From the NCBI RefSeq assembly GCF_021869535.1, contig NW_026262581.1, positions 102,610,001 to 102,674,000 of the forward strand: a DNA stretch of 64,000 nt, in the 5' to 3' direction. A program made the translations under genes and the position numbers. Source of the DNA: Mytilus californianus (lineage: Eukaryota). This document shows positions 1 through 52,679 of the stretch, one piece after another; within the stretch, counting starts at the first letter, position 1, and each line of letters starts with the position of its first letter. Under the pieces are notes generated by a model. That model was not told where the DNA came from, did not search any database, and saw nothing but the letters and a program-made list of their open reading frames with translations.

Positions 1-130
1 GGACGATATGCTAGACCACCAGAACCTCTATAAGAACGTTTATGTATTTCTGTGTAGTGACCGAATTGAAGATGAGAAGCACTTTCTCTAAAATGAAACT
101 GTTTTGTGTGCAGATATAAAGAATATTTCA
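1..130 (+). mobile_element. 3' remnant of a non-LTR retrotransposon ORF2 (C-terminal Cys/His motif)
   Basis: Manual translation across a stop and a frameshift gives GRYARPPEPL*ERLCI..SDRIEDEKHFL, matching the GRY..ERLC..C..IEDExHFL motif typical of LINE ORF2 C-termini. Confidence 0.55.
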
Positions 131-329
131 AACAAATTCCTTTAAAGTTTTGCCAAAAGAGTTTCATTTTATGTATCGAAATGTGTAACAAGTGTTTATT
201 TAAATCCCCACTGGAGGGCCTCTGACAGACTGAGTGCGCGTAAAATCATTGTTATCGCTAGCCGATGACAAACAAGTTAAAGGTAAATGATTCAGTATTA
301 TTAACAACAAAAGTACTACGGTTGTCCAC

Positions 330-1990
330 ACTGTTACGGGAATACCTCTATATATAGAGATAGATTGAGAGAACTTTAAAGAGTTCGTCAAACAAATACT
401 TATCTCCAATTGGAAAAAAATACTGTAATTAAATGTCTTATCATTTTAAAGCTTAATCACTTATTTTTATTATTACCAAATCCAAACAATGGGTTACTAG
501 TACTTAACCAGTTTGTTCACATTTATTTCCCTGCTATTTGGGATGGTAAATCTGACAAAATCAAAAGAGAAGCAATTTCTCAAATATATATATAGTTGAT
601 GGACTTACCATGTTGAACTTAAAACAATATGTAAAAAGATTAAAATAAGTTTGGATATGAAGAAGTATTAAACAAACTAATAATTATTATAAATTACTAA
701 CTTATTCAGAAAAAATAATTTAAATGAACTGCTTTAAATAGGTCTAGGTTCTTTTTGTCAAGAAGTTTTTAACGCTTGGACAGAAATCCAAACTAAAGTG
801 AATGTTAAAAACGAATATGATTTTATCACATCTAATATTTGGAATAATAAACAAATTAAGGTTGGTAATCAACCCCCCAACCCCCTTTTCATAAATAATG
901 GACTGAAAAAGGAGTCTGGTTAATTAATGATTTAAATAATCATGATGGACAGTTAATGAACTGGCAAGAATTTAAAAAAAAACAATATATTGATACCTCT
1001 TTTTATAGAATCAGATTCAGATTCAATATTTTATTATAGTCTCACCACAAACAATTACATATATTTACACAATAAAATATTCATACAGGTACATAAAAGA
1101 GATAACAAGAAACATTACATTTAATGTATGTGCCAATCTTAAAAGATATATGAGAGACTGTACAAGCAATTTTAAATACAGTTTGATAATGTACACATTA
1201 TATATAATATATATTTGTTTAAGAATATCATTTAATTACAGCATAATTAATGATATAAAAACCATTTCTTCTGATTAAAATGTTATAGAAGGTTCTGGCC
1301 ACACTTTATTTCAGCTATAAAACGGCTTGATATTAAATGTAATCAAATTTTGAAGCTTTATAGGCCAATTACACCAATTACTATCAAAATATTCTTAAAA
1401 TGTACAAAAGGATCAAAAGACATGTACAGCATTCTAAAGGATAAAAAAAAACAAATATCACGTCACAGGGAAATTGTCCTCAATCCAAAAAAGACACACT
1501 GTTATCTGGAATTTAGTGTATAGAATGCCATTTTACATAACTCAAAATACAGTCGCTCCAATACCAGATCACTCACAGAATATTGGGGACAAATGAATTA
1601 TTTACAAAATTAAAGTTATACAAAGCAACAAATGTACTTTCTGTATGGACTCAATAGAAAACATATTCTGGACTTGACATGTCAAAAAGTATTTGACGTA
1701 TGGGAAGAACTTAATTATAGATGTATACAAAATTAAAGTGCAAACTGAACTACTTCTCAACTTAGAAATAGTTTTACTTGGGGTCTTAGAAAAAACTTTA
1801 AAAACCTACACAAGAAACCTCAAGATAGTATTAACTAAATTTTATATAGACAAACCAAAAATGCAAAGCGGACAAGTGAATATTGTAACATTTAAAAACT
1901 ATCTTAAATAAAATTTGTAAATTGAAAAACATCATATTTTATAAAAAAAAAATAAAGTATTGCAAAGAGCGTAATCCTGCTGGAACCCCT
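330..1990 (+). mobile_element. Degenerate L1/Tx1-clade LINE, C-terminal half of ORF2
   Basis: Broken frames give KYLSPIGK.TVIKCLIILKLNHLFLLLPNP, IWDGKSDKIKREAISQ, DGLTMLNL, SNIWNNKQIKVGN, WTEKGVWLINDL and a zf-RVT-like LQYQITHRILGTNE..CTFC..IFWT. Many stops and frameshifts. Confidence 0.8.
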
Positions 1991-2083
1991 TGCTCCAACT
2001 AATAGAATAATTAAAACAAGTAAACTTTAATTTAAGTAATATAAGTATTCTCCAAATCCAGACTGCCTGGGTTTTTATCCTTA

Positions 2084-2763
2084 CTATTTATCTATAAGTT
2101 TGTCAAATGATTTAAAGAAACAACCGTTTGGATTTGTCTTGATTATGTCGAGGATTGATTTGGAAAATCGACGAATTACCGTATTTTTAACATATAATCT
2201 TGATATATGTACTTTTGTCAATAAACTAATTACAAAAAAAAGATATATATAGTTTCCATCTGGGTTTGATTGGAAATCCATTAAATCAACATGACTGTCC
2301 TCTAACTCTTTGGATAAAATGGGTTTCACCGCTACTCCCTCCCCTATATGTGCTTTTTCTCCATGTTACAATTTTAACAAAGTGAAAGAAATCGTTCAAT
2401 GGCATCACGGGAAATGTTTGCATATAGCCATTATTAAATTGTTCTTAGGGAGTTATTTGTCCTGCATTTTTTTTTTAGTTGTAATCTCTGTCCTGCCTTT
2501 TTATTTTGCACTCTATTCGGTCGTGCCTTTTTTTATTAGTTTATCCTGACGTTTTTTTACATAAATTGTCATCCTGCCTTTTTTTTTGCAAAAATGCTCA
2601 TCCTGCCTTTTTTTTTTTTGTAAAAATGCTAATCCTGCCTTTATTTTTTACTCAAAACTCCTTTCCTGCCTTTTTTTCAAATTTCATCCTACCCCCCCCC
2701 CCCCCCCCCCACATAAAAATCAAATGGTAGCTCCCTTAAATCGTACGGTCTCTGTGTCATGAA
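2084..2763 (-). pseudogene. KRBA2/SCAND3-like DDE integrase remnant, downstream part (copy 1), interrupted by a MITE
   Basis: With the MITE removed, the minus strand reads VH..RDRTI*EQFNNGY/ANISRDAIERFLSLC*NC..GVAVKPILSKELEDSHVDLMDFQSNPDGNY, i.e. integrase H2C2 zinc domain plus the start of the core with the first catalytic D. Confidence 0.75.
2448..2735. mobile_element. MITE with TTA target duplication (PIF/Harbinger-like), left TIR partly deleted
   Basis: tta|GGGAG...CAAATGGTAGCTCCC|tta; internal TCCTGCC-(T)n subrepeats; paralog at 16090-16342. Confidence 0.8.
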
Positions 2764-2820
2764 CTGGGGCTTGTTTTTTTTGTATCTTTGTTCTTAATGG
2801 GTTTATCAAACACCCTTAAA

Positions 2821-3030
2821 AGAGGGACGAAAGATACCAGAGGGACAGTCAAACTCATAGATCGAAAACAAACTGACAACGCCATGGCCAAAAATAAAAA
2901 GACAAACAGACAAATAATAGTACAGATGACACAACATAGAAAACTAAAGACTAAGCAACACCAACCCCACCAAAAACTGGGGATGATCTCAGGTGCTCCG
3001 GAAAGGTAAGCAGATCCTGCTCCACATGTG
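2821..3030 (+). repeat. Interspersed repeat family A (AGAGGGACGAAAGATACC...), SINE-like
   Basis: Near-identical inverted copy at 25147-25368; partial copies near 52318-52410 and 62473-62600. Confidence 0.85.
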
Positions 3031-3271
3031 TTGTTGCTTATGTTATTACAAATCTCATTTTATAGATACATTAGTTATTAGGTCTTGTGTCTTATCAAAG
3101 TTTATACATCATATTATATTTTATTACAACTTTGTTCATACTATTGACATTATTATCATCATTCGAGATATATACGTTTTTCCAAGGATATAACTTTTCT
3201 CTGATTAATTGATTAATTAGTTGAATCTAAACTGTAACACTCGGACATTGACCTTTCATTTATCACTGGTC

Positions 3272-4764
3272 ATGGCGGATCGCCGTGCACCTCGTTTCAG
3301 ACAGAGGTCTAGTCAGTGGGACAGTGCCGATCCAGCTAACTGGACTGCTAACAAGTTGAAAGATGAATTAGAAAATATTAACATTTTTGTCCCTGTTTCA
3401 CTGGGAAAGAATATGCTCAAGAAAATATACATGGACAATATCGCGCGTAGGAACGTTGCCCCAGCTGACCAACAGATGACAGGCAACACCTCACAGACGT
3501 CAGCATAATCAGACAATGCACCAAATACAACTTCTTCTGATGCAAGTGCTAATTTAAACACAGACATAATTGCCAGCTCTAATGAAGTTCCTCAAGTTCA
3601 AAGAGATTGAACTTCGGGCAGTGGTAGTAATTCGGCTAGAATTAGTGCCGTGACAGAACCGCGGATGAATTTTCACAGTGAAATGGCCGGAACTACGTCA
3701 TCCAATATGGCGGCGCCCAGTGCCAGTAATGTCAACAACGAAGTTATGACAGGGTGTTGAATTCAATGCAGTCCATGCAAGGAACGATGCTTGGTTTACA
3801 ACAGATAGTCATCAATTTGATAAATATCAATGACAGACCAATAACCGTTGATGCTAACAACCTCAGCACTGCATACGCAGCCATGAAAAGCAACGATCCC
3901 GGTCCAAGCACCAGTTTAGGAGCTAAATGTAGCCAGACTTTTCCTTTGAATGGTGGGTATCGTTTCCCTATTTCGGAATTTGAGGTACCATCAGAATGCA
4001 TCCCACATGTTGACATTGTTTCTGAGGTTATTAAGAAACGTATTTGGGAGGGAAAAAATGTTAACTTAGCGGCCCTGTTAATCCCTAAACACGAAGCAGA
4101 CAAGAACATTGTTCAACAACAAGGGTCTATCACGGTCAACTTGTCCAATCATGAAGATACTAGACTACTAAAATCTTTGAGCATAAGTAAATTCATAACT
4201 GCCTTTGGCAAATACAAAAGAGTGATGTGTTCAAAATTCCCTAATAGGAGAATTGAGTTGGACAGATATGAAGCCAATATTATTGATATATACAATGTAT
4301 ATGGGGCTAAATTTTACGACTATCATTGTCAGTTTTCATCCAGGGCAGCAGCAGCATTGAGAGACTGCAACATTAAAGTTGATTGGTCAATCAAAGATAC
4401 AACTATGCTCAGTATGGTTGCCGGGAATGCCAAGGTCAATTCATGTTCCAATTGCTCATCAACTATGCATTTATCTTCATTCTGTCCACATCTACAAAAT
4501 ATAGGAACAAACAAAGTGGCCAACACAGCTAATTATTCTAAGAGTTCAAATTTTGCTGTGAAGGATGTGGACCGTTATGGCAGGAAAAGAGTTACACACA
4601 ATGAAACTGAACTCTGCAATAACTTTAACGATAGGAGGTGTAATAAGCAACCTTGTCAATATGCACATATTTGTTCAATTTGCTATTCTTATAACCATGC
4701 AGCATTCATGTGTTCAAGAAAGAAAAATCCCAAACAAATCAACACAGACAATATAAATAAATGA
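3272..4764 (+). pseudogene. Ngaro gag-like ORF1 (in-frame stops at 3508 and about 3610, frameshift about 3750)
   Basis: MADRRAPRF..NWTANKLKDELE N-terminus; IWEGKNVNLAALL core; C-terminal Cys/His fingers CSNCSSTMHLSSFC and CNNFNDRRCNKQPCQYAHICSICYSYNHAAFMC. Confidence 0.85.
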
Positions 4765-4788
4765 CTAGATTTTAACGAGAGAGAAAAA

Positions 4789-6395
4789 GTGGATACTCCA
4801 ATAAATGTAGATGCCTTAAATAATCATCCGGATAAACAATTTGTGAATTATTTATGCCATGGTCTTGCTTTTGGTTTTAATACCTTAATTTCTAATATAG
4901 AGGTTCCTACTAAAGAATGTCGAAATCTAAGATCAGCATCTATTCAACCAGATATTGTCGATAAACTTATTGAAAGTGAAGTAAATAAAGGATTTTTAGA
5001 AGGGCCATTTAAAGAATTGCATTTTAAGAAATACAGAGTAAGCCCAATAGGTGTTGCTATAGGAAAATATTCAGGAAAGCCAAGACTTATAGTAGACTGA
5101 TCTTCCCCGCATGAAAATATTGTGCTTCAAAGTGTTAATGACATGATTGACAAAGATAGTTGCTCTTTATCATATTTGCGCATTGACGATGCAATTCAAA
5201 TTATACAGAATTTAGGAAGATACACAACCATGTGTAAAACAGATATTTCCGATGCGTTCAAATTAATGCCAGTAATACCCTCGCAGTGGCACATGTTTTG
5301 TATTAAATGGCGTACACATTATTATTTCTATACCAAACTTGTATTTGGCTGTCGATCAAGCCCAAGAATTTTCGATAACTTGTCGCAAGCAGTGTGTTGG
5401 ATAGCAAAGAATAATTTTGGCATAGAACTTATTTTGCACCTTCTTGATGACTTCATAACTTTTGAACATCCACATAAATGTGGACAGAGAAATATGGATT
5501 TATTGTACTACATTTTTGACACACTAAAGATTCCAATGGCTAAACATAAAACTTCAGGTCCAGACACAGTAATTGAATATCTCGGAATTATTCTGGATTC
5601 AAATTTAATGGAGGCAAGACTGCCAAAAGCTAAACTTCTTCGAATTTCAACTTTCTTGAAAGAGTTTCTGATTAAAAAATCCTGCACAAAGCGGGAGGTG
5701 TTACAATTACTATGCCATTTAAATTTTGCATCTAGAGTCGTCATTCAAGGGAGAGCATTTGTATCCCATCTGATCTTAGTGTCAACAACAGTTAAGGCTT
5801 TACGCCACTATATCAAACTAACATGTGAATGCAGGGAAGACATTTGAATGTGGCTCTTTTTTCTTTCAAATTGGAATGGTGTCAGCATGTTTTATAACAA
5901 AGAAAATATAACTTCTGATGATTTGTGTTTATATACAGATGCCTCTGGTTCTATCGGTTTTGGTGGCTATTATAAAGGACTGTGGTTTGCTGAATCATGG
6001 CCATCAATGTTTTCAAATTTAGTAGTTGATGAAAAAGAAGTATCTATAGCTTTTAGAGAACTGTACCCTATAGTGGTATCAGCAGTTTTGTGGGGACACA
6101 TGTGGAAAAAGCAAAGAATAATTTTCATGTGTGATAATGAGGCTACGGTAGCCATCTTGAAAAAAGGACGTTCCAAATCAGCACATATAATGCCTTATGT
6201 AAGGAGATTAACATTAATAGCTGCACAACAAATTTTATGTTTTTGTCTAAACATGTACCAGGAAAATTTAATTCTAAAGCTGATGCTTTGTCTCGTTTGC
6301 AGATAGACAAATTTCGTCGCCTTGCGAAAGAAGCACAGGAGTATCCATGCAAAGTGCCTCCTCCTCAACTAGTGTTATGGAGCTCGACACCGTAG
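4789..6395 (+). pseudogene. Ngaro reverse transcriptase / RNase H (stops at 5100 and 5847, frameshift about 6260)
   Basis: YRVSPIGV, KPRLIVD*SSP, KTDISDAFKLMP, LVFGCRSSPRIF, HLLDDF, EYLGIILDS; RNase H LYTDASGSIGFGG, ELYPIVV, CDNEATV, KADALSR. Confidence 0.95.
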
Positions 6396-12565: not shown

Positions 12566-13180
12566 AAAATTGAGAATGGAAATGGGGAATGTGTCAAAGA
12601 GACAACAACCCGACCATAGAGCAGACAACAGCCGAAGGCCACCAATGGGTCTTCAATGCAGCGAGAAACTCCCGCACCCGGAGGCGTCCTTCAGCTGGCC
12701 CCTAAAAAAATATGTATACTAGTTCAGTGATAATGGACGTCATACTAAACTCAAATTATACACAGGAAACTAAAATTAAAAATGATACAAGACTAACAAA
12801 GGCCAGAGGCTCCTGACTTGGGACAGGCGCAAAAATGCGGCGGAGTTAAACATGTTTTTTGAGGTCTCAACCCTCCCCCTATACCTCTAGCCAATGTAGA
12901 AAAAACAAACGCACAACAGAACGCACAGTAAAACTCAGTATAAGAGAAGTCCGAGTCCGATGTCAGAATAGGAAACAAAAGAAAATAAACAAAATGACAA
13001 TAATACATAAATAACAACAGACTACTAGCAGTTACTGACATGCCAGCTCCAGACCTCAATTAAACTGATTGAAAGATTATGTCTTCATCATATGAATATC
13101 AGGCACAATCCCTCCTGTTAGGGGTTTAGTATTATACCGTCATAAAACAAATGAGAAGAACATAACCCGTGTCATGCCAA
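12566..13180 (+). repeat. Interspersed repeat family B (AAAATTGAGAATGGAAATGGGGAATGTGTCAAAGAG...), inserted in copy 1 only
   Basis: Absent at the paralogous site near 21675 (GCAGTCTATG); flanked by duplicated CAGT. Other copies at 40774-41203 and 18660-18723 (-). Confidence 0.9.
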
Positions 13181-37607: not shown

Positions 37608-37763
37608 NNNNNNNNNNNNNNNNNNNNNNNNNNNNNNNNNNNNNNNNNNNNNNNNNNNNNNNNNNNNNNNNNNNNNNNNNNNNNNNNNNNNNNNNNNNNN
37701 NNNNNNNNNNNNNNNNNNNNNNNNNNNNNNNNNNNNNNNNNNNNNNNNNNNNNNNNNNNNNNN
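37608..37763. other. Assembly gap (156 N)
   Basis: Seen directly. Confidence 1.
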
Positions 37764-40773: not shown

Positions 40774-41203
40774 AAAATTGAGAATGGAAACGGGGAATGT
40801 GTCAAAGAGACAACCCGACCAAAGAGCAGAAAACAGCCCAAGGCCACCAAAGGGTATTCAACACAGCGAGAAAATCCCGCACCCAGAGTCGGGCTTCAGC
40901 TGGCCCCTAAACAATAATGTATACTAGTTCAGCGAAAATGGACGTCACACTAAACTCCGAAACATATAAATGAACCAAAACTAAAAACACATTCAAGAAA
41001 AACAAAGGCCAGAGGTTCCTGACTTGAGTCAGACACAAAAATGTGGCGGGGTTAAACATGTTTTGTGAGATCTCTACCTTCCCCTATACCTCTAGCCAAT
41101 GTGGAATAGACAAACACACAGCAATACGCACAGTAAAACTCAGTTTAAAAGTCCGAGTCCGATGTTAGAAAAGGGTAACAAAAGAAACTAAGCAAAATGA
41201 CAA
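40774..41203 (+). repeat. Interspersed repeat family B inside the LINE
   Basis: Collinear with 12566-13010. Confidence 0.9.
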
Positions 41204-42993
41204 ATATCAATAACAGCACCAATTGTAACCATAATTTTCCAGAAATCACTCACAACGTGCTGTATATCGTTTGATTGAAAACATGCAAATGTCGCACACA
41301 AAAAAAAGGTGAAAATATAATACAGTAAATTACAGACCAATATCTCTCACTTGTATCAGTTGTAAACTAATGAAACATGTCATAACAAAACACGTAATTA
41401 ACCATCTAGAAAATAACAACTTGTTATGTGATCTCCAGCACGGCTTCGTACACTCTAGATCATGTGAAACACAACCACTGTCCTTCGTACAAAAATGTGC
41501 ATCAAATTCAAACAATAACACTTAAACAGACTTAATATTTATGGACTTTGCCAAAGCCTTTAAGTACCTAAAACATTCATCACATTAAGTTACAGGCAGG
41601 CATACCTATCATTTGTCCATCCAAAATTAAAGTACGCTTGCTCGGTATGGAACCCTCACACTGCTGAAAACTTCAATAAACTCGAGATGGTCCTACAACG
41701 GGCAGCTAGGTATGCCTGTAATCGCTTTCATAATATACTCTCAACTGGCCTAACTTAAAACCCGACTTATAATGTTCTATAAAATTGAACACCACATTGT
41801 CGCAGTACCCAAAGTATTTCTTTTACCAACAGGCACTAGAACTCGGCAAATCCATTCTTATACACAGATATTTACTAGCATATAAAGACTGCTACAAATA
41901 TTCACGTTCCCTCTTACTATCACATAATGGAACTAACTCCTTTAAAATGTAGTACTTTCCCCTACACTCGGTATTTTTAGAGTACAGTGACAATCATGAT
42001 GTCCTGTCCGGCTGCAGCTTCCTATTGGTTTTTGTATGTATTTACTCTTGTCTATGGCTACAAGATATTTTTTTTATTTTGTCACACATGATGAGTCGAG
42101 CTTCTTTTAGTCTTGTTTGCAAGCGTTTCCATTCCATTCTTAAACCGATACCTATTTTTATCATGTTTATCAATGAATATAAATTTATGATTATAACGTA
42201 TTGTTCCATTTGTTTCTTAACGTCTGTTTCTAACAACAATTATTTTCCTCTATTTATAACTATAAAACCCATGGCCGAGACAACTTTTCAAATTATGGCC
42301 AAAACGTCTCGCATCGAAATGATGGAAACCACTCATCACTTTTAGATATGTAGGAGAGTCCCAGCCCAGAATTGTGTTTTAAGGCCAATATCCCAATTCT
42401 TTGTTTATAAAGAAAACTTCTTCTAACATGCTATTTGCCAGACAAAGTGTATTCTGTTCTAAAGAAAGTGTTTATGGGCACTGAAGGAAAACAAGGTTGC
42501 TCTGTCAATGTATATTTGTTCCGCCTAACAGATGTTCCACTAGAAACTTTGTTATAAACAATGCCATAATATCTGTTCCTGTTGCAACAAATATTCTATA
42601 CCATTTATTCCGTTAGGAACATATACTGTAATATTTATTCCGCTGGAAATAATATTCCAGAATACTTTTTCCATTTAGAACTTATATTATGAAGCAACTT
42701 CTATTTCGTGACAACTTTATTGTGCATTTTATCAAGAATCGTAACATATTTAGCCAAGATTATGTTGTTCATTATTTTCGTAACTGTAGGTAGAACAGAT
42801 GGATCTATACCCAAATGCACAACTTTCTGCAACTTATGCAAATGGTTCTCTTTACAGAAAAATAGATGGCAAAGATAGCAAGCGGACAATAACATACAAA
42901 AGTCTAATAATGCAGACAACACCATAGCCAAAAAGAAATAGTCTACAAAACATTACACAGTAAAACTAATCAAAGAGCTGAAAGCTCTGAGGA

Positions 42994-43155
42994 TAATACG
43001 GTTTATCTCATTTATAAGATAAACCAATTTAATGAATGAGAAATGATTACTGCGTCATTCGGATCCGGTTCTCGTTTCCCGATAATCAACGTCACATGAC
43101 TCTTCAGCATTACATTGAACTAGCCACTCTTGTAGATATGTAAAAGTTTCAAAAA
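42994..43155 (+). repeat. 162-bp direct repeat, copy 1 (copy 2 at 47199-47360)
   Basis: Three substitutions seen between the copies. Confidence 0.95.
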
Positions 43156-44312
43156 TGCAATCGTAAAAAATCATTGACATCCGCATGTCATATTACAATA
43201 TTTTGATATGAAACTATCGAAGAGACAAGGTAATTCTCCAAGAAAGGATTTTCATTTGCAAGGGCCAGCAAATGACGAAATTAAAAGGTAAACCGAACTG
43301 TCACCATACGATCCGATGCCATCAACACGAGGAACACCTCCAGTTTCTTTCGACATGTATGGATGTGTAAAGATCATAGAACAATTTAATTAATGTATCT
43401 TCACCATAAAAATTATACAATGCACCAATGACAGGGACAGCTTCCAATGTGTCAGTGGCTCATGGACCGGTGATCAATTTAATGGCAGAACAAAATCTTC
43501 ACACCAGGAGCCCCCATTTATAATTCCACACGGCACAACATGCACAAGGAAAACACGATTCAAAAGAATAGGAGAACCACTGATCCAAAGAATTCATAAC
43601 CTGGTTCCAGCGGTTTGCAGATTTCGTCAAACATTAATCTTGGTATGTTGAATTTATAAAAAAGTTGATGTTTTGCGGCGTATAATGATATTTATCTCAT
43701 AACGAATAAGATTAATCTGATAGTGATAAACATAAGATTACTGAAAGGTTTATTTATTATTATTATTTGATGTCATATATTTAATTTGAATTTCACATGA
43801 GCAATATGATCGCACTGAGACTTTAATCAGAGACATAATATGTAAGTTTTACATGTCTCTGCTTTAATTTACAATATGTTATATCACCATGCAGTCGTTT
43901 GAAAGACGCACATAGCGCTATTACACACAAGATACACACGAGGGCAATAAGTGCAAATTCGTCAACCTTTATCTATTAATAACATTATACCACTTATTAT
44001 ACACAATTATACACTATGTGTTAGATGGTTCAGCTGACGTTGTAAATGAAATACACTATATGAGATTTAGAAGACAAATGACAAATTTTGAGGCGGATGA
44101 CGCTATAGCGTTAGAATAAATCCAATCAGAGTCGATGGCTTCGATTAAAGTATTTACACGTGCAAATTCTTTGAACAGTCTTAAATATTTCCTAATACTG
44201 TTTGATACACTTAAATCGGCATTACTATAAATAAAATGTACATAATTTATGCCTACAGTTTTCTCGTTTGACTTATTTAACATTTTTCTTTTGGGGTTTT
44301 TTAATTACTCAC

Positions 44313-44532
44313 TAATGCGGTATGGGCTCTGCTCATTGTCGAAGGCTGTACAATGACTTATTGTTATTAATGCGGTAGGGGCCCTGCTCATTGTTGAAGG
44401 CAGTAAAAAGACTTATTGTTATTAATGCGGCATGGGCTCTGCTCATTTTTGAAGGCAGTAAAATGACTTATTGTTATTAATGCGGTATGGGCCCTGCTCA
44501 TTGTTGAAGGCAGTACGATGACTTATTGTTAT
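44313..44532 (+). repeat. 55-bp tandem repeat x4, derived from an internal segment of family C
   Basis: Units start at 44313, 44368, 44423 and 44478 and run into the family C terminus GTTGTCTCATTGGCAATCATACCA. Confidence 0.9.
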
Positions 44533-46714
44533 TGATTTCTTTGCCATTTGGTCTACTGTGAAAAGTTGTCTCATTGGCAATCATACCAATTCTTTTTTAC
44601 ATGAGAGTTACTCAGTTACATGTATATATATATACTTTTCAATTTGCGTTTCTTTTCTTGTTAGCTTGCTTGCTTTAATTTATGCATGTTTGCCTAGCTA
44701 TTTACATTTATATGCATGTGTTCTTGTTGTATAATATGCTTATAATTTGATATTTGATTTTTATATTAAATATCAAGTCAGTTGAGAGATCTACAGAGCT
44801 CATGTTTACGTTGTTGAATCATACATACATGTATCATGCCCGACCCTAAATTTTCTTACTTACGTAAATAGAGTTAATATAGTTATACAAGCAAATATAG
44901 TTATACAAGCAAAGCTGAGTTGATATTTTCAAAAAAGACCTCAACATATGATATGTTATTACTATTGGCATAGGTTATTCAGATAGCTCTCTAAAACTCA
45001 TTTACCGTTGTTCTTGATAGTATATATATACACAACAGACACTGGACTTCCAGAACAACAGCATAACATGCTACGAATGAATTTAATACGATCAGAATAT
45101 ACCTTGCCAAAAAATTCACACTTTAATCAGTTCACGAAGATAAACTACGTCTTCTTCAAACCAGTAGTTAATAGGCAACTATGGACAGGTCAATTAATTT
45201 ATCAACAAGTCAACTTAGAGCAAATAAGGGAATTATGTGCACTTTTGACACAATTATTAAATTACTTTATAAACTCACGAAGCAGCAGACAGAGCATGGT
45301 ACACAATATCCTCTTTTCTTTGAAGTGCGATAATGTTATTGTATATATACATGTATTGTTTATAATATTTTTGATTGTCATCATCATCTAACACGGATAT
45401 GTGAACATTGAGGATACCTTTGTATTTTACTATCACATTTCTTTTACATGTCAGCACGAACTATGGGCTTTCCCACAACTATTTTTAGAAACAAAACAAA
45501 TATGTGGTATATAAGTTACGGACTTTTACAGACAAACACGTATATTATCCAGATGGGAGCCTCAATGAATTTTTAAATTTATTTCAAATACTCTTGATCT
45601 ATTTCCTTCTATTAAAAGGAACATTTAGCATTCCTATCTATTCACAGAGCTGATGGACTCATTCTTTTTAATTCTAGTCGGAATTAATCAACTATGCATC
45701 TATATACACCCATTACTTAGAGTAATACTTGGAATTTCACTCTAGCACCTAGTTCTTTTAGGTCACAAAATATATTCGACGTAAAACTATTCAAGTTTGA
45801 ACTTTCCAAAAAGCTGCACGGTCTGCTTAGCTGTATCCGAATTTTAAGTACTAGTAGGAATGCATGTGGTTGCCGATTTAGTACAGGAAGTGTGGTACTT
45901 TCTATATATTGATTGATACGAATAAATTAATTTTTAAAGTGTACGTTATACACCCATGGTTTTAAAATATTGGTCACGATACTTGTTGAAAATAAAAATT
46001 AAATATATACAAATGTACACGACTTCGAAGGGGTGCCTAGAATAGCATGAATTATATATACAGGTAATGCATTTTCGTAAACTTTGTAGAGGAACATAGA
46101 TTTGCAAAACTAATAGTGCATATTGCAGATTAACAAAGCAATTAGGTAGATTCATGGTATTATACCACCATCTTGGATTGTACTTTTGCAGTGAACAATC
46201 AGTCTAGTTGTTACCCAAATCTCCGAATTTGTAGACAGATGTTCAATGTTATTGATTAGACTGTTTATCTCTACGAAGAAAACTTCCTGATTTATCGCAT
46301 TATTAAAAATATTTTAACAAGTACCAAACATATGTGTTTTAGAATAAATTTGTTCAACTAAGCCAGTTAAGGCGAGATAACTCTTTTAGTAAACCTATTG
46401 ATAATTCATGATCGGTTTATCTGTGGATGTATTACTGCTAAAATATTGCGTTTTTATGATGATATTAAATATATATATAACATGGATAATACAACAAGAG
46501 AAGTGATATCGTCCAAAACAAATTTTGCTGAGGGGATATCATGGAAGGATAACAGCCCCATTATAACAAAGCTATTACAAAAGGAAAAATATTATTGTCC
46601 ACGTTTCAAACGTATTAACAAAGAGTAATGCCTTCTTAGCTAGTTCACTTAAATGGACTTTTAGGTTGTGGAAAGGGGGGGGGATTCTGATGAGTGTGTA
46701 TAGACACACTCAAG

Positions 46715-47201
46715 TGGCAAGATTAAGGGGTTATGATCGTTTCCCGTAATTGTACGTCGGATCATATTAGGTTTTTACTTTCCTGCGGTACCGCAGGAAG
46801 TTCTGTTGAGACCATCTCATGTCTACCCTGAGTGGCCGGTTCTGAATTGGTACCAGTTCGAGCTTGACTGTTTTATGATACATAGTATGGACTATGTATT
46901 CAGTGTGCATATAGAGTTTTATGATATAGAAACTGTTAATCTTTACTCCCCTGAAACCAGGGGGTGATGCGAATAAGACCCGACGTATTTGGGGATCATA
47001 ACCCTCGTTCTCTTTAGGATAAACCTTGAGGAACTTGAGCATCCATTGCTACCAATGGTGCACAGATTTGTCAGTTAAATCAATCATGTCGGCATTCTGT
47101 TATCATGTCAGACCTCGTCATTCAAAGTGAACTGTGGCCGTTATTTCCACATTAATTATTTGTTTGTTATGTTTTTGCCTGAAACTTGATTCTTTGATTA
47201 A
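46715..47201 (+). repeat. 487-bp direct repeat, copy 1
   Basis: Two substitutions versus 47763-48249; both copies give the same 91-aa minus-strand ORF apart from one residue. Confidence 0.95.
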
Positions 47202-47360
47202 TACGGTTTATCTCATTTATAAGATAAACCAATTTAATGAAAGAGAAATGGTTACTGCGTCATTCGGATCCGGTTCTCGTTTCCCTATAATCAACGTCAC
47301 ATGACTCTTCAGCATTACATTGAACTAGCCACTCTTGTAGATATGTAAAAGTTTCAAAAA
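47199..47360 (+). repeat. 162-bp direct repeat, copy 2, fused to the end of the 487-bp repeat
   Basis: The junction shares TAA with the end of 46715-47201. Confidence 0.95.
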
Positions 47361-47762
47361 CCCACCCACCTCCCCCTGCAATCTTCCATCTAATAACAAT
47401 TCTTTTGTCTGCTGCTGTTTTATTTATCTTTTCAGAATGACCAGAATAGGCCGGATCTATAACATTTTGGACAAAAAAGAGGAGACAAACAAGCCGATGG
47501 ATTTGCTTGCTGAATCATACGTTCGAGAACTATATATGTTAATGCTAATTTTCATGAATGGCTACCACTTTTATCTACATATTCAGACACCAGCAGTGTG
47601 AAAATAGAATTATCAATACCTGCTATTAGTTCTTCGCCTGGAATGCATTTAACTTTTGACTTTATTTGGATAAAGATCAGCATTTATCTTGATTACTTGA
47701 TTCTAATTGTCCATTATTTTGTAATAAAATCATTCGTCACAGTCAAAAAGGATGTCGGGATC

Positions 47763-48249
47763 TGGCAAGATTAAGGGGTTATGATCGTTTCCCGTAATTG
47801 TACGTCGGATCATATTAGGTTTTTACTTTCCTGCGGTACCGCAGGAAGTTCTGTTGAGACCATCTCATGTCTACCCTGAGTGGCCGGTTCTGAATTGGTA
47901 CCAGTTCGAGCTTGACTGTTTTATGATACATAGTATGGACTATGTATTCAGCGTGCATATAGAGTTTTATGATATAGAAACTGTTAATCTTTACTCCCCT
48001 GAAACCAGGGGGTGATGCGAATAAGACCCGACGTATTTGGGGATCATAACCCTCGTTCTCTTTAGGATAAACCTTGAGGAACTTGAGCATCCATTGCTAC
48101 CAATGGTTCACAGATTTGTCAGTTAAATCAATCATGTCGGCATTCTGTTATCATGTCAGACCTCGTCATTCAAAGTGAACTGTGGCCGTTATTTCCACAT
48201 TAATTATTTGTTTGTTATGTTTTTGCCTGAAACTTGATTCTTTGATTAA
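47763..48249 (+). repeat. 487-bp direct repeat, copy 2
   Basis: See 46715-47201. Confidence 0.95.
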
Positions 48250-48828: not shown

Positions 48829-49726
48829 ATATGGTGTACAAAATTTTTTGAACCTTTTGTTTGCGGTATACCATCTTTTCCGCAAGTTTATTGTTTTCTG
48901 GTTGGTATTAAATTAATAATTAAGATCCATTTTGGTACAACTGTGATCCGTTTATTTGGCAATCGCCAATGGCAGTCAGCAGGGTTTAAGAACATTTGTT
49001 GTTCGACCTGTTAGTCAAATGCGTTTTGTTAAAATATACTTTTTCACTTTTTTGGTCTTATGAAAAATTTTGTTTGTGCTGTATATAGACCCCTCCAGCA
49101 AGAAATTTGTTTTGCATGCACACGTATAAAAATTGCGGTTTTTATCCAACGCAATCATAGGTTTGAACGTTGTTTTCAATTTAGACGTTTATATTTTTTC
49201 GTTTGGGCTTGTATTATATTTGCCTTCGGGTTTATATGATTCGTTCATCCTATTTCGACTCCTCAAAATTCAAGAGTCTATCCTAAATTGAGATAAATTA
49301 TATGGCCTTCCAAATACCGTTTCGATTCCTAACATCACTGAAGAGACATTAATTGTCGAAATCCAGATATGGTGTACAAAAATTTTTTTGGACCTTTTGT
49401 TTGCGGTATACCATCTTTTCCGCAAGTTTATTGTTTTCTGTTTGGTATTAAATTAATAATTAAGATCCATTTTGGTACAACTGTGATCCGTTTATTTGGC
49501 AATCGCCAATGGCAGTCAGCAGGGTTTAAGAACATTTGTTTTTCGACCTGTTAGTCAAATGCGTTTTGTTAAAATATACTTTTTCACTCTTTTGGTCTTT
49601 TGAAAAATGTTGTTTGTGCTGTATTTAGACCCCTCTACCAGGAAATTTGTTTTGCATACACACGTATAAAAATTGCGGGTTTTATCCAACGCAATCATAG
49701 GTTTGAACGTTGTTTTCAATTTAGAC
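48829..49726 (+). repeat. Partial tandem duplication of ~360 bp (48829-49186 and 49367-49726) with a hammerhead-like motif at the start of copy 2
   Basis: Direct comparison of the two segments; near-identical ORFs 48763-49014 and 49369-49554. Confidence 0.9.
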
Positions 49727-52679
49727 TTGTATATATATATATATAAACTGAAATCTTTAAATGACAACCTAAATTATTGCAGAATTTATTTATTTTTCAA
49801 ATGATTTAATGTTTGTGAGTCATTTATTTCAAATAGTTAACCCGTACTGTAATAAGGAGATGTGGTTACATGATTGCCAATGAGATAACAGTCTGATAAC
49901 TATCCACCAGAGTCTAAATAATGTGGCTGTTGGCAGTTATAAGTCACTTTCCAGACCTCAACAATGAGCTAAACCGATTCATTGTTTTCATGCACCATAG
50001 GAAAAAGAGGAGTTGTGGCTTGGTGACAAGAAAATATAAGAAATATAATAATAATATAAATAAGAAAAAAAGAAAAAAGACAGGACTAAGCCACTAGACT
50101 ATATATAAAGTGCTCCATTACTAATCCTCAGAGGAGCTGCTGATCTATACTAGTACTTCGAAAAGAAAGATGTTGAGGACTTAGCCAGGGCAAGCTGAAT
50201 TTTGAGACTTAGGAACATCAGAGTAGATGTGGGACACCACATATATAGGCCAATCTGCCCTATTTGCTGCCACCTATTAAAATTAATGCCTAGGGTGGTA
50301 ATCAATCCCATGTGCATTTAATCTGTTGTTCTCTATGCAAAAAACGCAGCTGTAATGTAAATATGGGAATTTACATCATTATAGCCTCATTTTTATAAGG
50401 ACCTAGCTAGACCTTTCTCTTAGCAAGGTGTATTATATAACTCTGAAAGCAATACAATCCAGTGTTCTACCCAGGACTTTTTTATATATGTGGTATTAGC
50501 GCCTGGTTTAAGATTGATTCACCTTATGTTTTGTGTTTATGACTTGATGTTTCATTTATTTATAACTACCATGTTAGTTATATTATATTAAATAGACAAA
50601 GACCTGGATTTTTTATACATGTGCCATGTGCATGAACAGAAATGCAAATAAGTGATTATTAATTAAACTTTAAAAATTAAAATGCCTAGATAACTTAAAT
50701 AATTTGATTTTATTACCACACGTCCCCAAATGTAGCACAGTAGGTATATCATTTTTTCTCATTTTCAGTTGTATGACTCATAAACTAGTTATATATCCTT
50801 TACAGCTTCATAATTTACTTACACATACTTAAGAAGGTTTTCAATGACAAAATTGGAATTTCTTCATTAATTTTTATTTACATTTATCATATTACAATTT
50901 TGCAATTAAAATTGGTATATCCTTAAATATCAAAGGAAGAAATGGAATCACGCTTTCCATAAGTACTGAAATGTTATTAAAGACATGGTTAAAAAGGCTA
51001 ACATATTTGATCATATTCCAAGATTAATATGATAGAAATCTTTTTTTTAAGAAGTTTTTTTTTATTATTAAAGGTGGATTATCAATAAATAAATTTTTGC
51101 CAATTGAAACATTACAACCGCCTTTAAAAAATGTGTTTGATAATTTTATGAATATGTGAATATTGCCACCAGAAATATTTTACAAGATTTGACAATACTT
51201 GTTTTAGCACTTTTGCCCACTGAAATTGTCTCCCTTCACAACTTCCTGTTTACACATTATTTGCTGTATCTCTTGGAATCATTAAATGCCATTCCTTATC
51301 CAAGCCATCCAGTTTTAACATTGATTTTTAAATAATATTTAATTAATAGTTATTGAAAAGTGGATGGCAAATCTCAATATTTTTAATTTATTTTCAAGAA
51401 ATTTTCGTATCCGATTTTTGAAAATAGCGATGCAAGTAAAATTAATCGTAAAATACGGGCTTGTAATGAACACCTGGACAACGGGAATGCTTTTCTCAAA
51501 ACAATACAGGTTTAATTGTTAACTCGAAAAAGTAATGAAATTATCGTAGATGATTCAAAAATGGACGAGACCACGTTGTCAGAGAAAAAACTTTCCTTAA
51601 ATACTTTTGGTATGATTTATTGAGCACTGCCTACTCCTTTTATAAAGTTTCTGCATCTTTTAATTCTTTTTAAAGTGAAAAATCCACAAAGAAATAGTCC
51701 TTTGACAGAAAAACCTATGCAAATATCGCAATTTTGTTCTTTAATTGAACCTGCCCCTTCGATATTTAACCTATATTATGTCTGCAGCAGTAACTTTGTA
51801 AACAAAATACATACGCACCTCGTGGATATAACCGTATCACTAATTTTCGATTCTTTAAAACTTCTTAAATCTTGATAAAGACCATTATCTTTCGTATGAT
51901 TTCAAGATGATTCTGATTATTATTTTTTGAATGACTTTAAAGTCTAGCTGACAAGAAAGGTTGACATACTTTCAAGAACTATTTTGTCTAGCGATAGCGA
52001 TTTGTTATCATTGGTATGTAAAAAGTCCAAACCATAACAAAACGGATTTATTTATATTCTGATTTTTTTACGGATTGTAAAGATATGCACATAAAAGCAA
52101 AAGCTCATATAAATATGAAAAATATACTTAAGGGATAGCTCAAAATACCATTTAATAACAATAAACATATAGACAGGTTAAGAATGAAATTCTGTACAGT
52201 ACATAGGTATGTAAAATACGGAACCGGGTTCGGAAGGCGGCTTGGAAGCGATAAAATAACATCTTGTCAATGGTATAGTAAAATTGACGCTTTGACAGCG
52301 TCATTTTCCAAAAACTGAACAACACAAACCTACAAAACCTTGGGGTGATCTCAGGTGTTGAAGGGTAGTAAGATTCTGCTCCACTATATGCACCTGTCAA
52401 GTTGCTAATGGCATATAAAAGAATTCGGTAATAATTAAGTCGCATTCAATAATGTCATAATTGGGGAAAAAAAGATGAAATTGTAGTCATCTCTGACACT
52501 GATTTCATGATGGTCAACCAAATGACACGCAAAACTTTCGAAAGGATGACTTCAACTTTACAAAAAGGAACCTTTGTTTCAATAGCTTACTTGTAAATAA
52601 GCAACCCACTATCATAATTGGAAACGCAAGTTCTGGGATATCGCATCGACTGGAGATATACTAGCAAATAATAAATTGA

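What the first reader, a model, noticed from the sequence alone, without database searches (positions are those of the whole stretch)
42994..48249. 5.3-kb segment with PAT/TOC1-style split direct repeats (A...BA...B) but no RT or recombinase
A (162 bp, 42994-43155), a 3.56-kb interior, fused B+A (46715-47360, sharing TAA), a ~400-bp spacer, then B (487 bp, 47763-48249). The repeats are about 98-99.6% identical. This is the established terminal architecture of PAT/Ngaro YR retrotransposons and of non-autonomous TOC1, whose internal BA junction mirrors the circle junction. The interior holds only decayed unknown ORFs and a 55-bp tandem array. It is a candidate non-autonomous, cargo-carrying YR element that might be mobilised in trans by Ngaro-type elements like the one at 3-8 kb. 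The alternative is local template-switch duplications.
Basis: partly seen in the sequence, partly recalled or inferred. Interest (0 to 1): 0.7.

Follow-up and report, generated by a model that had tools for sequence, protein, structure and literature searches.

The report
Gene-less Ngaro retrotransposon in a mussel
This 5.3-kb stretch of a Mytilus mussel genome is a gene-less jumping element that keeps only the split end-repeats of a Ngaro (tyrosine-recombinase) retrotransposon and has probably been copied to about 15-20 places using the enzymes of an intact 6.3-kb relative; it is well supported but belongs to a kind already known.

Summary
B+A (sharing TAA) ... 402-bp spacer ... B (487 bp). 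It is not a local duplication. The same 5,256-bp unit, with identical ends (TAATACGG...GATTAA), lies at 15 or more unrelated loci in this 1.65-Gb Mytilus genome at 94-98% identity, without target-site duplication. Other individuals carry an empty site at this locus with a single TAA.

A1/A2 and B1/B2 evolve in concert: 35 of 35 subfamily-diagnostic substitutions are shared by both members of a pair. The internal B|A junction and the 3' TAA never vary. The 5' trinucleotide does vary, as expected if it comes from the target.

The element encodes nothing. Its A, 5' leader, pre-B and B modules are homologous to Ngaro elements in the same genome. One 6.3-kb family has intact RT, tyrosine recombinase and SGNH-hydrolase ORFs in the layout A1-RT-YR-hydrolase-B1A2-spacer-B2. 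Solo A-spacer-B and A-interior-B forms also exist.

Verdict: a non-autonomous Ngaro derivative, probably mobilised in trans. The helper is more likely the 6.3-kb family than the neighbouring YR element at 3-8 kb, which shares no termini. It is a new member of a known kind (compare TOC1, SIRE/VIPER).

The parts
42994..43155 (+). A1, the 5' terminal repeat (162 bp). Its first three bases (TAA, 42994-42996) are the trinucleotide copy that varies between copies and is probably target-derived.
   Evidence: 98.1% to A2. (same start TAATACGG in 17 independent copies; 5' trinucleotide TAA x11, TAT x3, TAC, TGA, CAC). (7/51 vs 0/111 substitutions, p=2e-4).
43156..43660 (+). 5' leader, homologous to the leader that follows A1 in YR/hydrolase-bearing Ngaro relatives.
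   Evidence: (complete listing, 36/36 candidates scored): 15 main-family copies, 3 copies of the ~80% subfamily, and 66-73% matches directly after A1 of decayed coding relatives (e.g. C1:86578632, C143:116268908, C154:28254786, C165:46011118).
43661..46663 (+). Non-coding interior specific to this family and its ~80% sister subfamily. No RT, YR or hydrolase remnant.
   Evidence: no ORF above 127 aa, no Pfam hit. (tblastn with the neighbour's ORFs and with the hydrolase: nothing). (71-78% patches in the ~80% subfamily only).
44313..44597 (.). 55-bp tandem array, a piece of a very abundant genomic repeat embedded in the interior and present in all family copies.
   Evidence: TRF, 4 units, 90% matches. 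(array present in every copy). (depth 94,000-273,000 in this bin against about 55-160 for the element body). (related pieces at 10.8, 17.7, 20.0 and 22.9 kb of the window).
45998..46385 (.). Interior segment belonging to another, more abundant repeat.
   Evidence: table 2: depth 360-2,580 against about 65-160 in neighbouring bins.
46664..46714 (+). 51-nt pre-B segment, homologous to the 3' UTR between the hydrolase stop codon and B1 of the 6.3-kb Ngaro family.
   Evidence: L027:709-762 aligns to element positions 3671-3721, 44/51 identical. The hydrolase stop is at L027:674-676.
46715..47201 (+). B1 (487 bp, 40% GC, several perfect hairpins). With A2 it forms the internal B|A 'circle-junction' copy.
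   Evidence: (junction GATTAATACGG invariant in all copies). (RNA fold z = -3.4). (hairpin cores invariant across subfamilies, 3 compensatory pairs). (422/444 aligned bases identical to B of L027).
47199..47360 (+). A2, overlapping B1 by TAA (47199-47201).
47361..47762 (+). 402-bp spacer between A2 and B2. The 6.3-kb family has a spacer of the same length class (about 405 bp).
   Evidence: unique in the window. (B2 starts about 405 bp after A2 in the 6.3-kb copies). (A2-spacer-B2 matched co-linearly at 81-84% in other relatives).
47763..48249 (+). B2, the 3' terminal repeat, ending in the invariant TAA (48247-48249).
   Evidence: (3' end CTTTGATTAA identical in 16 independent copies). (empty-site joint 42993->48247 with 3 ambiguous letters).

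Best explanation
The segment 42994-48249 is one copy of a low-copy family of non-autonomous Ngaro-type (DIRS-order, tyrosine-recombinase) retrotransposons in a Mytilus genome. The family has about 15-20 copies plus an older ~80% sister subfamily. It keeps the cis-acting modules of a Ngaro element: A1 with a ~500-bp leader at the 5' end, and pre-B + B1|A2 + spacer + B2 at the 3' end. The gag/RT/YR/hydrolase genes are replaced by about 3 kb of non-coding mosaic DNA.

Likely mechanism, with the status of each step:
(1) The element is transcribed. This is suggested: the family is present in RNA-Seq contigs above the level expected from DNA carry-over.
(2) The RNA is reverse-transcribed by the RT of an autonomous Ngaro. 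This is inferred. The best candidate is a 6.3-kb family with intact RT, YR and SGNH-hydrolase ORFs, the same A1...B1A2-spacer-B2 layout and near-identical terminal ~25 nt.
(3) The internal B1|A2 junction serves as the template that rebuilds both ends and the B2|A1 junction, as shown experimentally for the ICR of DIRS-1. Here this is supported by complete concerted evolution of A1/A2 and B1/B2 and by an invariant internal junction.
(4) The YR inserts the product at an (A)TAA target without duplication, so that TAA flanks the element on both sides. This is shown by the empty site with one TAA, by the absence of a TSD, and by the 5' trinucleotide varying like a target sequence while the 3' and internal ones never vary.
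(5) Recombination between the repeats yields solo A-spacer-B and A-interior-B forms and tandem A-spacer-B units. These forms are observed.
For: Dispersed copies with fixed ends and unrelated flanks. Copy number: 15 copies of the 5' leader (complete listing) and 15 exact internal junctions.

No TSD; TAA at both ends; A at position -1 in 15/17 copies (p=5e-6); 5' trinucleotide substitutions 7/51 against 0/111 at the 3' and internal copies (p=2e-4).

Empty allele: joint 42993->48247 with 3 letters fitting either side, seen in three DNA runs from three studies at depths close to the single-copy flank. The left-flank contigs of X1 and X5 run on 35-42 nt without entering the element.

Concerted evolution: no fixed A1/A2 or B1/B2 difference within the main family, and 27/27 (B) and 8/8 (A) subfamily-diagnostic substitutions shared by both members.

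Homology to coding Ngaro elements: B 95% over aligned columns, A 84%, pre-B 44/51 to L027; leader 66-73% to relatives bearing YR and hydrolase remnants.

The 6.3-kb family, by position: A1, then RT (P0130, RVT_1 E=7e-17, 97% identity, no stops, 539-aa frame), YR (329 aa, SAM-like + Phage_integrase, 95-96% identity, no stops), in-frame TGA, SGNH hydrolase (221 aa, no stops), B1A2, ~405 bp, B2. Found in C95, C165, C121 and C88.

Solo and tandem forms.

RNA: (X15 contigs over 43126-48191; element depth 9-55, both flanks 0; the hyper-abundant array shows an RNA/DNA ratio of only 0.8%).

Literature: trinucleotide at the circle junction and at the target, and ICR essential for retrotransposition (PMC7192593); A1-[ORFs]-B1A2B2 layout and solo AB repeats (PMC8547959); hydrolase ORF after the YR in Ngaro (PMC9210276).
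Against: Mobilisation in trans is inferred, not observed.

The candidate helper's A and B are only about 84-95% identical to this family's over aligned columns, with indels. Its 5' leader and the start of its spacer show no detectable similarity, so a closer helper, possibly extinct, may have existed.

All runs laid were Logan contigs, which cannot show transcript ends or strand. The RNA signal could include some DNA.

The empty-site joints have short sides (26-30 nt) and carry the tool's caveat 'between: not known'. The right flank is itself repetitive.

The one-sided variability of the trinucleotide is not what a symmetric 3-bp overlap heteroduplex would predict.

I could not read the 6.3-kb copies themselves, only map proteins and repeats onto them by position.
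Confidence: 0.85

Rival explanations
1. The family moves as DNA only. A tyrosine recombinase excises and re-inserts a double-stranded circle (Crypton-like behaviour) with no reverse-transcription step, and the split repeats are merely inherited.
For: The YR chemistry (TAA crossover, no TSD) is the only step directly visible in the sequence. No RT step is shown for this family.
Against: Cut-and-paste would not explain the complete concerted evolution of A1/A2 and B1/B2 (35/35 diagnostic substitutions shared). It would also not explain why the full Ngaro cis architecture, including the internal junction, is retained and invariant. The relatives encode an intact RT. The family is present in RNA-Seq contigs. 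The star-like phylogeny with 15-20 copies fits copy-and-paste.
Confidence: 0.06
2. The copies are relics of a burst driven by a now-extinct, closely related autonomous Ngaro. The intact 6.3-kb family cannot recognise these termini, so the family is immobile today.
For: The 6.3-kb family's leader, and the start of its spacer, show no detectable similarity to this family. The relatives with the more similar leaders (66-73%) all carry stop codons in YR or hydrolase.
Against: The window copy is young (A1/A2 + B1/B2 differ at 5/649 positions; 0.48% from the six-copy majority) and polymorphic. The first and last ~25 nt and the junction are nearly identical to those of the 6.3-kb family. This rival concerns only the identity of the helper and does not change what the element is.
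Confidence: 0.07
3. It is another class of element that forms head-to-tail composites, such as a Helitron/Helentron-like rolling-circle element or two tandemly inserted elements sharing ends.
For: No TSD; an A precedes and A/T follows the insertion. Tandem A-spacer-B units exist. Non-autonomous Helentrons carrying satellite-like arrays are common in bivalves (PMC7492417).
Against: There is no 5'-TC/CTRR-3' terminus and no subterminal GC hairpin at the 3' end. The composite as a whole is the transposed unit at 15 or more loci. The termini are homologous to those of RT/YR-encoding elements with the same layout. No Rep/helicase partner is indicated.
Confidence: 0.01
4. It is a local template-switch or tandem duplication, or an assembly artefact, unique to this locus.
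For: None beyond the repeat pattern itself.
Against: Identical architecture at unrelated loci on at least 9 contigs. Independent read sets from 12 studies hold the sequence.
Confidence: 0.01

Closest known systems
Ngaro superfamily of YR retrotransposons (e.g. DrNgaro1 of zebrafish; Xenopus DIRS-53_XT with a fourth, SGNH-hydrolase ORF; Cafeteria Ngaro types 1-4)
   Same: Split direct repeats A1...B1A2...B2 with the internal repeats downstream of the YR. No TSD. Solo AB units. In the related 6.3-kb family, the order RT - YR - SGNH hydrolase (PMC9210276, PMC8547959, PMC4157794).
   Different: This family has no ORFs at all. A2 and B2 are separated by a ~400-bp spacer, whereas the reviews draw A2 and B2 as adjacent. 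The interior is unrelated mosaic DNA.
TOC1 of Chlamydomonas reinhardtii (non-autonomous DIRS-order element; TOC3 is a coding relative)
   Same: A gene-less YR-retrotransposon derivative that keeps the split repeats and depends on a coding relative (PMC9940879).
   Different: TOC1 belongs to the PAT/DIRS lineage of a green alga. This family is a Ngaro-lineage element of a bivalve. No sequence relation was tested.
SIRE / VIPER of Trypanosoma cruzi
   Same: SIRE corresponds to the A2-B2 region of VIPER plus a short exclusive internal region (PMC6681497). The 1,051-bp A-spacer-B units seen here (L030; C143:24.63 Mb; C121:60.55 Mb) are the same kind of object.
   Different: SIRE is a high-copy short element of a kinetoplastid. 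Here the short form is rare and the main non-autonomous form is 5.3 kb, with a full A1...B1A2...B2 set.
LARD and TRIM (non-autonomous LTR retrotransposons; TRIMs are described in bivalves, PMC6934838)
   Same: Terminal cis modules kept, coding interior lost or replaced, mobilised in trans. Repeats are regenerated at each cycle and recombine to solo forms.
   Different: Those have unsplit LTRs, DDE-integrase insertion with 4-6-bp TSDs, and a PBS/PPT. None of these features is found here.

Membership tests
Ngaro superfamily (DIRS order), as a non-autonomous derivative | Split direct repeats in the order A1 ... B1 A2 ... B2, with A1=A2 and B1=B2 | tested here: met
   (98.1% and 99.6%). The same layout is seen in every full copy.
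Ngaro superfamily (DIRS order), as a non-autonomous derivative | Encodes RT/RNase H and a tyrosine recombinase | tested here: not met
   This element has no ORF above 127 aa, no Pfam hit and no tblastn similarity to RT, YR or hydrolase. It can therefore only be a non-autonomous derivative. The homologous 6.3-kb family does encode RT and YR.
Ngaro superfamily (DIRS order), as a non-autonomous derivative | Terminal modules homologous to those of an RT/YR-encoding element of the same genome | tested here: met
   A, pre-B and B align to L027. The leader aligns to relatives carrying YR and hydrolase remnants. RT, YR and hydrolase map between A1 and B1 of the 6.3-kb copies.
Ngaro superfamily (DIRS order), as a non-autonomous derivative | Internal repeats lie downstream of the YR; no methyltransferase domain (this separates Ngaro from DIRS1/PAT) | tested here: inconclusive
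   In the 6.3-kb family B1A2 starts about 36 nt after the hydrolase ORF that follows the YR. Only about 360 nt lie between the end of the RT match and the YR start, which leaves room for RNase H but hardly for an MT domain. That stretch could not be read.
Ngaro superfamily (DIRS order), as a non-autonomous derivative | Insertion without TSD, with a short trinucleotide shared by circle junction and target | tested here: met
   TAA at both ends and at the internal junction. One TAA at the empty site. No other duplication.
Ngaro superfamily (DIRS order), as a non-autonomous derivative | RT/YR phylogeny places the coding relative inside Ngaro | not tested
   No tree was built. The assignment rests on architecture, on the SGNH hydrolase ORF after the YR (PMC9210276, PMC7192593) and on the apparent lack of room for an MT domain.
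Non-autonomous transposable element (general criteria) | Several dispersed copies share the same non-coding interior, so they were copied after coding capacity was lost | tested here: met
   Six co-linear copies at 94-98% identity and 15 copies of the leader; star phylogeny.
Non-autonomous transposable element (general criteria) | Demonstrated mobilisation by the partner's proteins | not testable with these tools
   This needs an experiment or pedigree data.
PAT/TOC1 group (DIRS lineage with split repeats and an MT domain) | The coding relatives carry the DIRS-type methyltransferase domain and lack the hydrolase ORF | tested here: not met
   The coding relatives carry an SGNH/GDSL hydrolase ORF after the YR, and there is little room for an MT domain. 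The resemblance to PAT/TOC1 is architectural only.

The most novel reading that the evidence does not exclude
Because the family shares only A + leader and pre-B + B|A + spacer-length + B with coding Ngaro elements, it may mark out the minimal cis-acting set for Ngaro retrotransposition. In addition, the strictly one-sided variability of the flanking trinucleotide (5' copy variable, 3' and internal copies invariant, A at -1) may record the polarity of the recombinase's strand exchange: the left trinucleotide would come wholly from a mismatch-tolerant (A)TAA-like target and the right one from the element. Neither point has been worked out for any Ngaro element.
Probability: 0.35. Interest if true: 0.55.

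Novelty: new member of a known kind. Interest (0 to 1): 0.42.

Why it matters
YR retrotransposons are the least understood retroelement order. Only DIRS-1 has experimental support for the role of its internal junction, and nothing comparable exists for Ngaro. This pair is a natural gene-less derivative together with a young, intact relative in the same genome. It shows which sequences are kept when everything dispensable is lost: A, the leader, B, the junction, and a spacer of fixed length. It gives a clean target-site rule, (A)TAA with one copy inherited from the target. It also shows that the repeats are rebuilt at each cycle.

Practically, it explains a repeat class that annotation pipelines would leave as 'unknown' in bivalve genomes. 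It also shows that the many 'SGNH hydrolase' and 'Tyr recombinase' gene models in Mytilus annotations (P0001-P0005, P0096-P0100, P0116) are pieces of Ngaro elements.

Tried and rejected
(1) The 252-aa RT-like ORF inside the ~80% relative L031 looked like the family's own RT. It belongs to an unrelated, hyper-abundant retroelement (about 80,000 first-look candidates) nested in that copy.

(2) The neighbouring YR element at 2-10.5 kb as helper: no shared termini, junction, split repeats or coding similarity. Its RT as a probe hit none of the 6.3-kb copies among the 150 scored of 1,871 candidates. That result was uninformative about the RT of the 6.3-kb family, which was later found with P0130.

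(3) A hydrolase remnant in our interior: none.

(4) Rfam and tRNA scans of the element: nothing.

(5) Covariation support for a B structure: only 3 compensatory pairs, because the hairpins are mostly invariant, so it stays suggestive.

Those copies were therefore annotated by position only.

(7) Earlier-findings look-ups by sequence and by words gave no note on this family.

(8) Higher-depth joints (42988->AAGTAA->48248 and 42993->A->48248) are paralogues of the repeat into which the element inserted, not alleles of this site.

Other remarks. The N run at 37608-37763 was left alone.


Full report
OBSERVATION. A is 42994-43155 and 47199-47360 (159/162 identical). B is 46715-47201 and 47763-48249 (485/487 identical). 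B1 and A2 overlap by TAA, a unique 402-bp spacer separates A2 from B2, and a 55-bp tandem array lies at 44313-44533. The interior has no ORF above 127 aa, no Pfam match, and no Rfam or tRNA match.

IT IS A MOBILE ELEMENT, NOT A LOCAL DUPLICATION. The window is C1:102610001-102674000 of a 1.65-Gb assembly. Earlier notes of this scan call the genome a Mytilus mussel, and the closest protein matches are M. edulis and M. trossulus. Searching that assembly with 42994-48249 found six co-linear copies, five matching query positions 1-5256 and one matching 4-5256, at 94-98% identity, on C1, C13, C110 and C121. Many copies with internal indels or nested insertions were also found. All keep the A...BA...B layout. 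In 17 independent copies the element starts TAATACGGTTTATCTC, and in 16 it ends CTTTGATTAA. The flanks are unrelated and there is no target-site duplication. The 505-bp stretch after A1 has 15 main-family copies in a complete listing, and the main-family internal junction has 15 exact occurrences. The family is therefore low-copy, at about 15-20 copies. An older sister subfamily at about 80% identity (L031-L033) is also non-coding. The six co-linear copies differ from their majority by 0.5-2.0%, and the window copy by 0.48%.

INSERTION CHEMISTRY. The internal junction reads GAT-TAA-TACGG in every copy. The 3' terminal TAA is invariant in 16/16 copies. The 5' terminal trinucleotide is TAA in 11 copies and TAT (3), TAC, TGA or CAC in the rest. 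That is 7 substitutions in 51 positions against 0 in 111 (Fisher p = 2e-4). The base before the element is A in 15 of 17 copies (p = 5e-6).

Contigs of three DNA runs from three studies, one labelled as a second organism, contain a joint 42993->48247 in which three letters fit either side. This is left flank - TAA - right flank with a single TAA. The depths (13, 39, 66) are close to those of the single-copy left flank (13, 28, 43). The left-flank contigs of X1 and X5 run on for 35-42 nt without entering the element. The insertion is therefore absent from other individuals, and the target held one TAA. [quoted passage not shown] Here the 5' copy behaves as the target-derived one. A symmetric 3-bp heteroduplex would not predict that all the variability is on one side, and I leave this asymmetry as an open point.

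THE REPEATS ARE REBUILT AT EACH CYCLE. Within the main family there is no fixed difference between A1 and A2 or between B1 and B2. B copies form a star: mean differences are 5.8 within a copy, 6.7 between copies at the same position, and 6.7 between copies at different positions. Between the main family and the ~80% subfamily, all 27 diagnostic substitutions in B and all 8 in A are present in both members of the pair, and none is confined to one member (with gap columns included). One copy (L004) carries the same private C>A change in both A1 and A2. This is the signature expected if one repeat templates the other during replication. The internal complementary region of DIRS-1 has been shown to be required for exactly this role (PMC7192593).

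WHERE THE ENDS COME FROM. A junction variant (TTAATTAATAAGG) marks a related family. Mapping its B+A block and its A alone, both taken from L027, gave copies with A1->A2 of about 5,290 bp and a total length of about 6.3 kb on C95, C165, C121 and C88, each with B2 about 405 bp after A2. L027 holds the sequence just upstream of one such B1. It contains an uninterrupted 221-aa ORF with GDSL/SGNH blocks (Lipase_GDSL_2, E = 2.9e-5) that ends 33 nt before the point where similarity to our element begins. That ORF is intact at 97-99% identity in every 6.3-kb copy.

Public Mytilus gene models fuse this hydrolase to pieces of a tyrosine recombinase. A 322-aa homologue with SAM-like and Phage_integrase domains and the R...K...HxxR...W...Y residues (P0097) maps at 95-96% identity, without stops, as a 329-aa frame directly upstream of the hydrolase in at least 8 copies. 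The two ORFs are in one frame, separated by a single TGA. A 395-aa RT (P0130; RVT_1, E = 7e-17) maps at 97% identity without stops, in 539-aa frames, between A1 and the YR.

For C95 the layout is: A1 1611060-1611235; RT 1612641-1613822; YR 1614185-1615150; hydrolase 1615154-1615816; B1A2 1615852-1616528; B2 1616931-1617379. This is the Ngaro architecture, including the extra hydrolase ORF reported for some animal Ngaro elements (PMC9210276, PMC7192593).

Our element aligns to L027 over the 51 nt before B (44/51), B (422/444 aligned columns) and A (114/135), and the first and last ~25 nt are nearly identical. Its 5' leader matches, at 66-73%, the leaders right after A1 of several decayed relatives that still carry YR and hydrolase remnants. 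It does not match the leader of the intact 6.3-kb family. Nothing of RT, YR or hydrolase remains in our interior. The interior instead contains pieces of much more abundant repeats.

DERIVED FORMS. Both families show A-spacer-B units with exact ends: main family L030, 1,049 bp; 6.3-kb family at C143:24.63 Mb and C121:60.55 Mb. Both also show A-interior-B units: main family C1:126996036-127001495; 6.3-kb family at C121:100.35 Mb and C120:0.31 Mb. One tandem ...B A-spacer-B A-spacer-B is seen at C1:39.04 Mb. These correspond to the 'isolated AB repeats ... reminiscent of solo LTRs' of Cafeteria Ngaro (PMC8547959) and to SIRE, which is the A2-B2 region of VIPER (PMC6681497).

EXPRESSION. An RNA-Seq run (X15) has contigs over 43126-48191, with 3-13 differences each. 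Depth is 9-55 across most of the element and 0 in both flanks. The hyper-abundant 55-bp array has an RNA depth of only 0.8% of its DNA depth in X1, whereas the element body has roughly 15-70%. This argues for transcription of the family, but contigs cannot give strand or ends. B folds better than shuffles (z = -3.4), and its hairpin cores are invariant across subfamilies that are about 80% alike. With only three compensatory pairs this remains suggestive.

COMPARISON AND VERDICT. The element works like TOC1 and SIRE, which are non-autonomous derivatives of DIRS-order elements. By the homology of its terminal modules it belongs to the Ngaro lineage. It fails the coding criterion of the family by definition. 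The likely helper is the 6.3-kb family, or an extinct closer relative.

I found no description of a non-autonomous Ngaro in the searchable literature. That library is incomplete, Repbase was not available, and the concept itself is established. I therefore rate it a new member of a known kind, of moderate interest.

LIMITS. No RT/YR tree was made, and trans-mobilisation is inferred.

Noticed in passing
L027:1-680 (= G000:C46:36609386-36610065): In the 6.3-kb Ngaro family the YR ORF ends '...RI' with a single TGA (L027:8-10), and the 221-aa SGNH hydrolase ORF follows in the same frame. This suggests stop-codon readthrough or a YR-hydrolase fusion product.
   Followed up: partly
G000:C1:39042100-39046270 (positions only): A copy of the 6.3-kb family ends in ...B1A2-spacer-B A-spacer-B, so it carries one extra A-spacer-B unit in tandem. 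This is what integration of a small circle at a B|A junction, or unequal recombination, would give.
   Followed up: no
L027:1501-2657 (G000:C46:36610886-36612042): A fragment of the 5.3-kb family (element positions 2624-3798) lies in inverted orientation inside the A2-B2 spacer of a 6.3-kb family copy.
   Followed up: no
L031:4034-4792 (G000:C57:16664533-16665288): A 252-aa RT-like ORF nested in a copy of the ~80% subfamily belongs to a hyper-abundant retroelement: about 80,000 first-look candidates, with many copies at 90-95% identity and 482-aa open frames.
   Followed up: partly
window 44313-44597: The 55-bp array region is among the most abundant sequences in the read sets (summed contig depth 94,000-273,000). 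Related pieces lie at 10.8, 17.7, 20.0 and 22.9 kb of the window. It is probably part of a very common mussel satellite-like or MITE-like repeat.
   Followed up: no
window 48829-49194 and 49367-49734: A separate pair of direct repeats (366/368 bp, 95.7%) lies 580 bp downstream of the element, within a right flank that is itself highly repetitive in the read sets.
   Followed up: no
window 5122-5847 and G000:C1:102528914-102529630: The RT ORF of the neighbouring YR element has a 96% identical copy about 86 kb upstream on the same contig. Its next relatives are only about 60% identical, with 540-aa open frames. About 1,870 first-look candidates indicate a large and diverse YR-retroelement population.
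   Followed up: no
proteins P0001-P0005, P0096-P0100, P0116, P0122-P0128 (public Mytilus annotations): Many Mytilus gene models named 'SGNH hydrolase-type esterase' or 'Tyr recombinase domain-containing protein' are spliced chimeras of Ngaro ORFs (basic N-terminus + RT start + YR piece + hydrolase). They are transposon-derived mis-annotations.
   Followed up: partly
window 41001-41218 and 12795-13019: An 84% identical repeat pair within the window, unrelated to the element.
   Followed up: no
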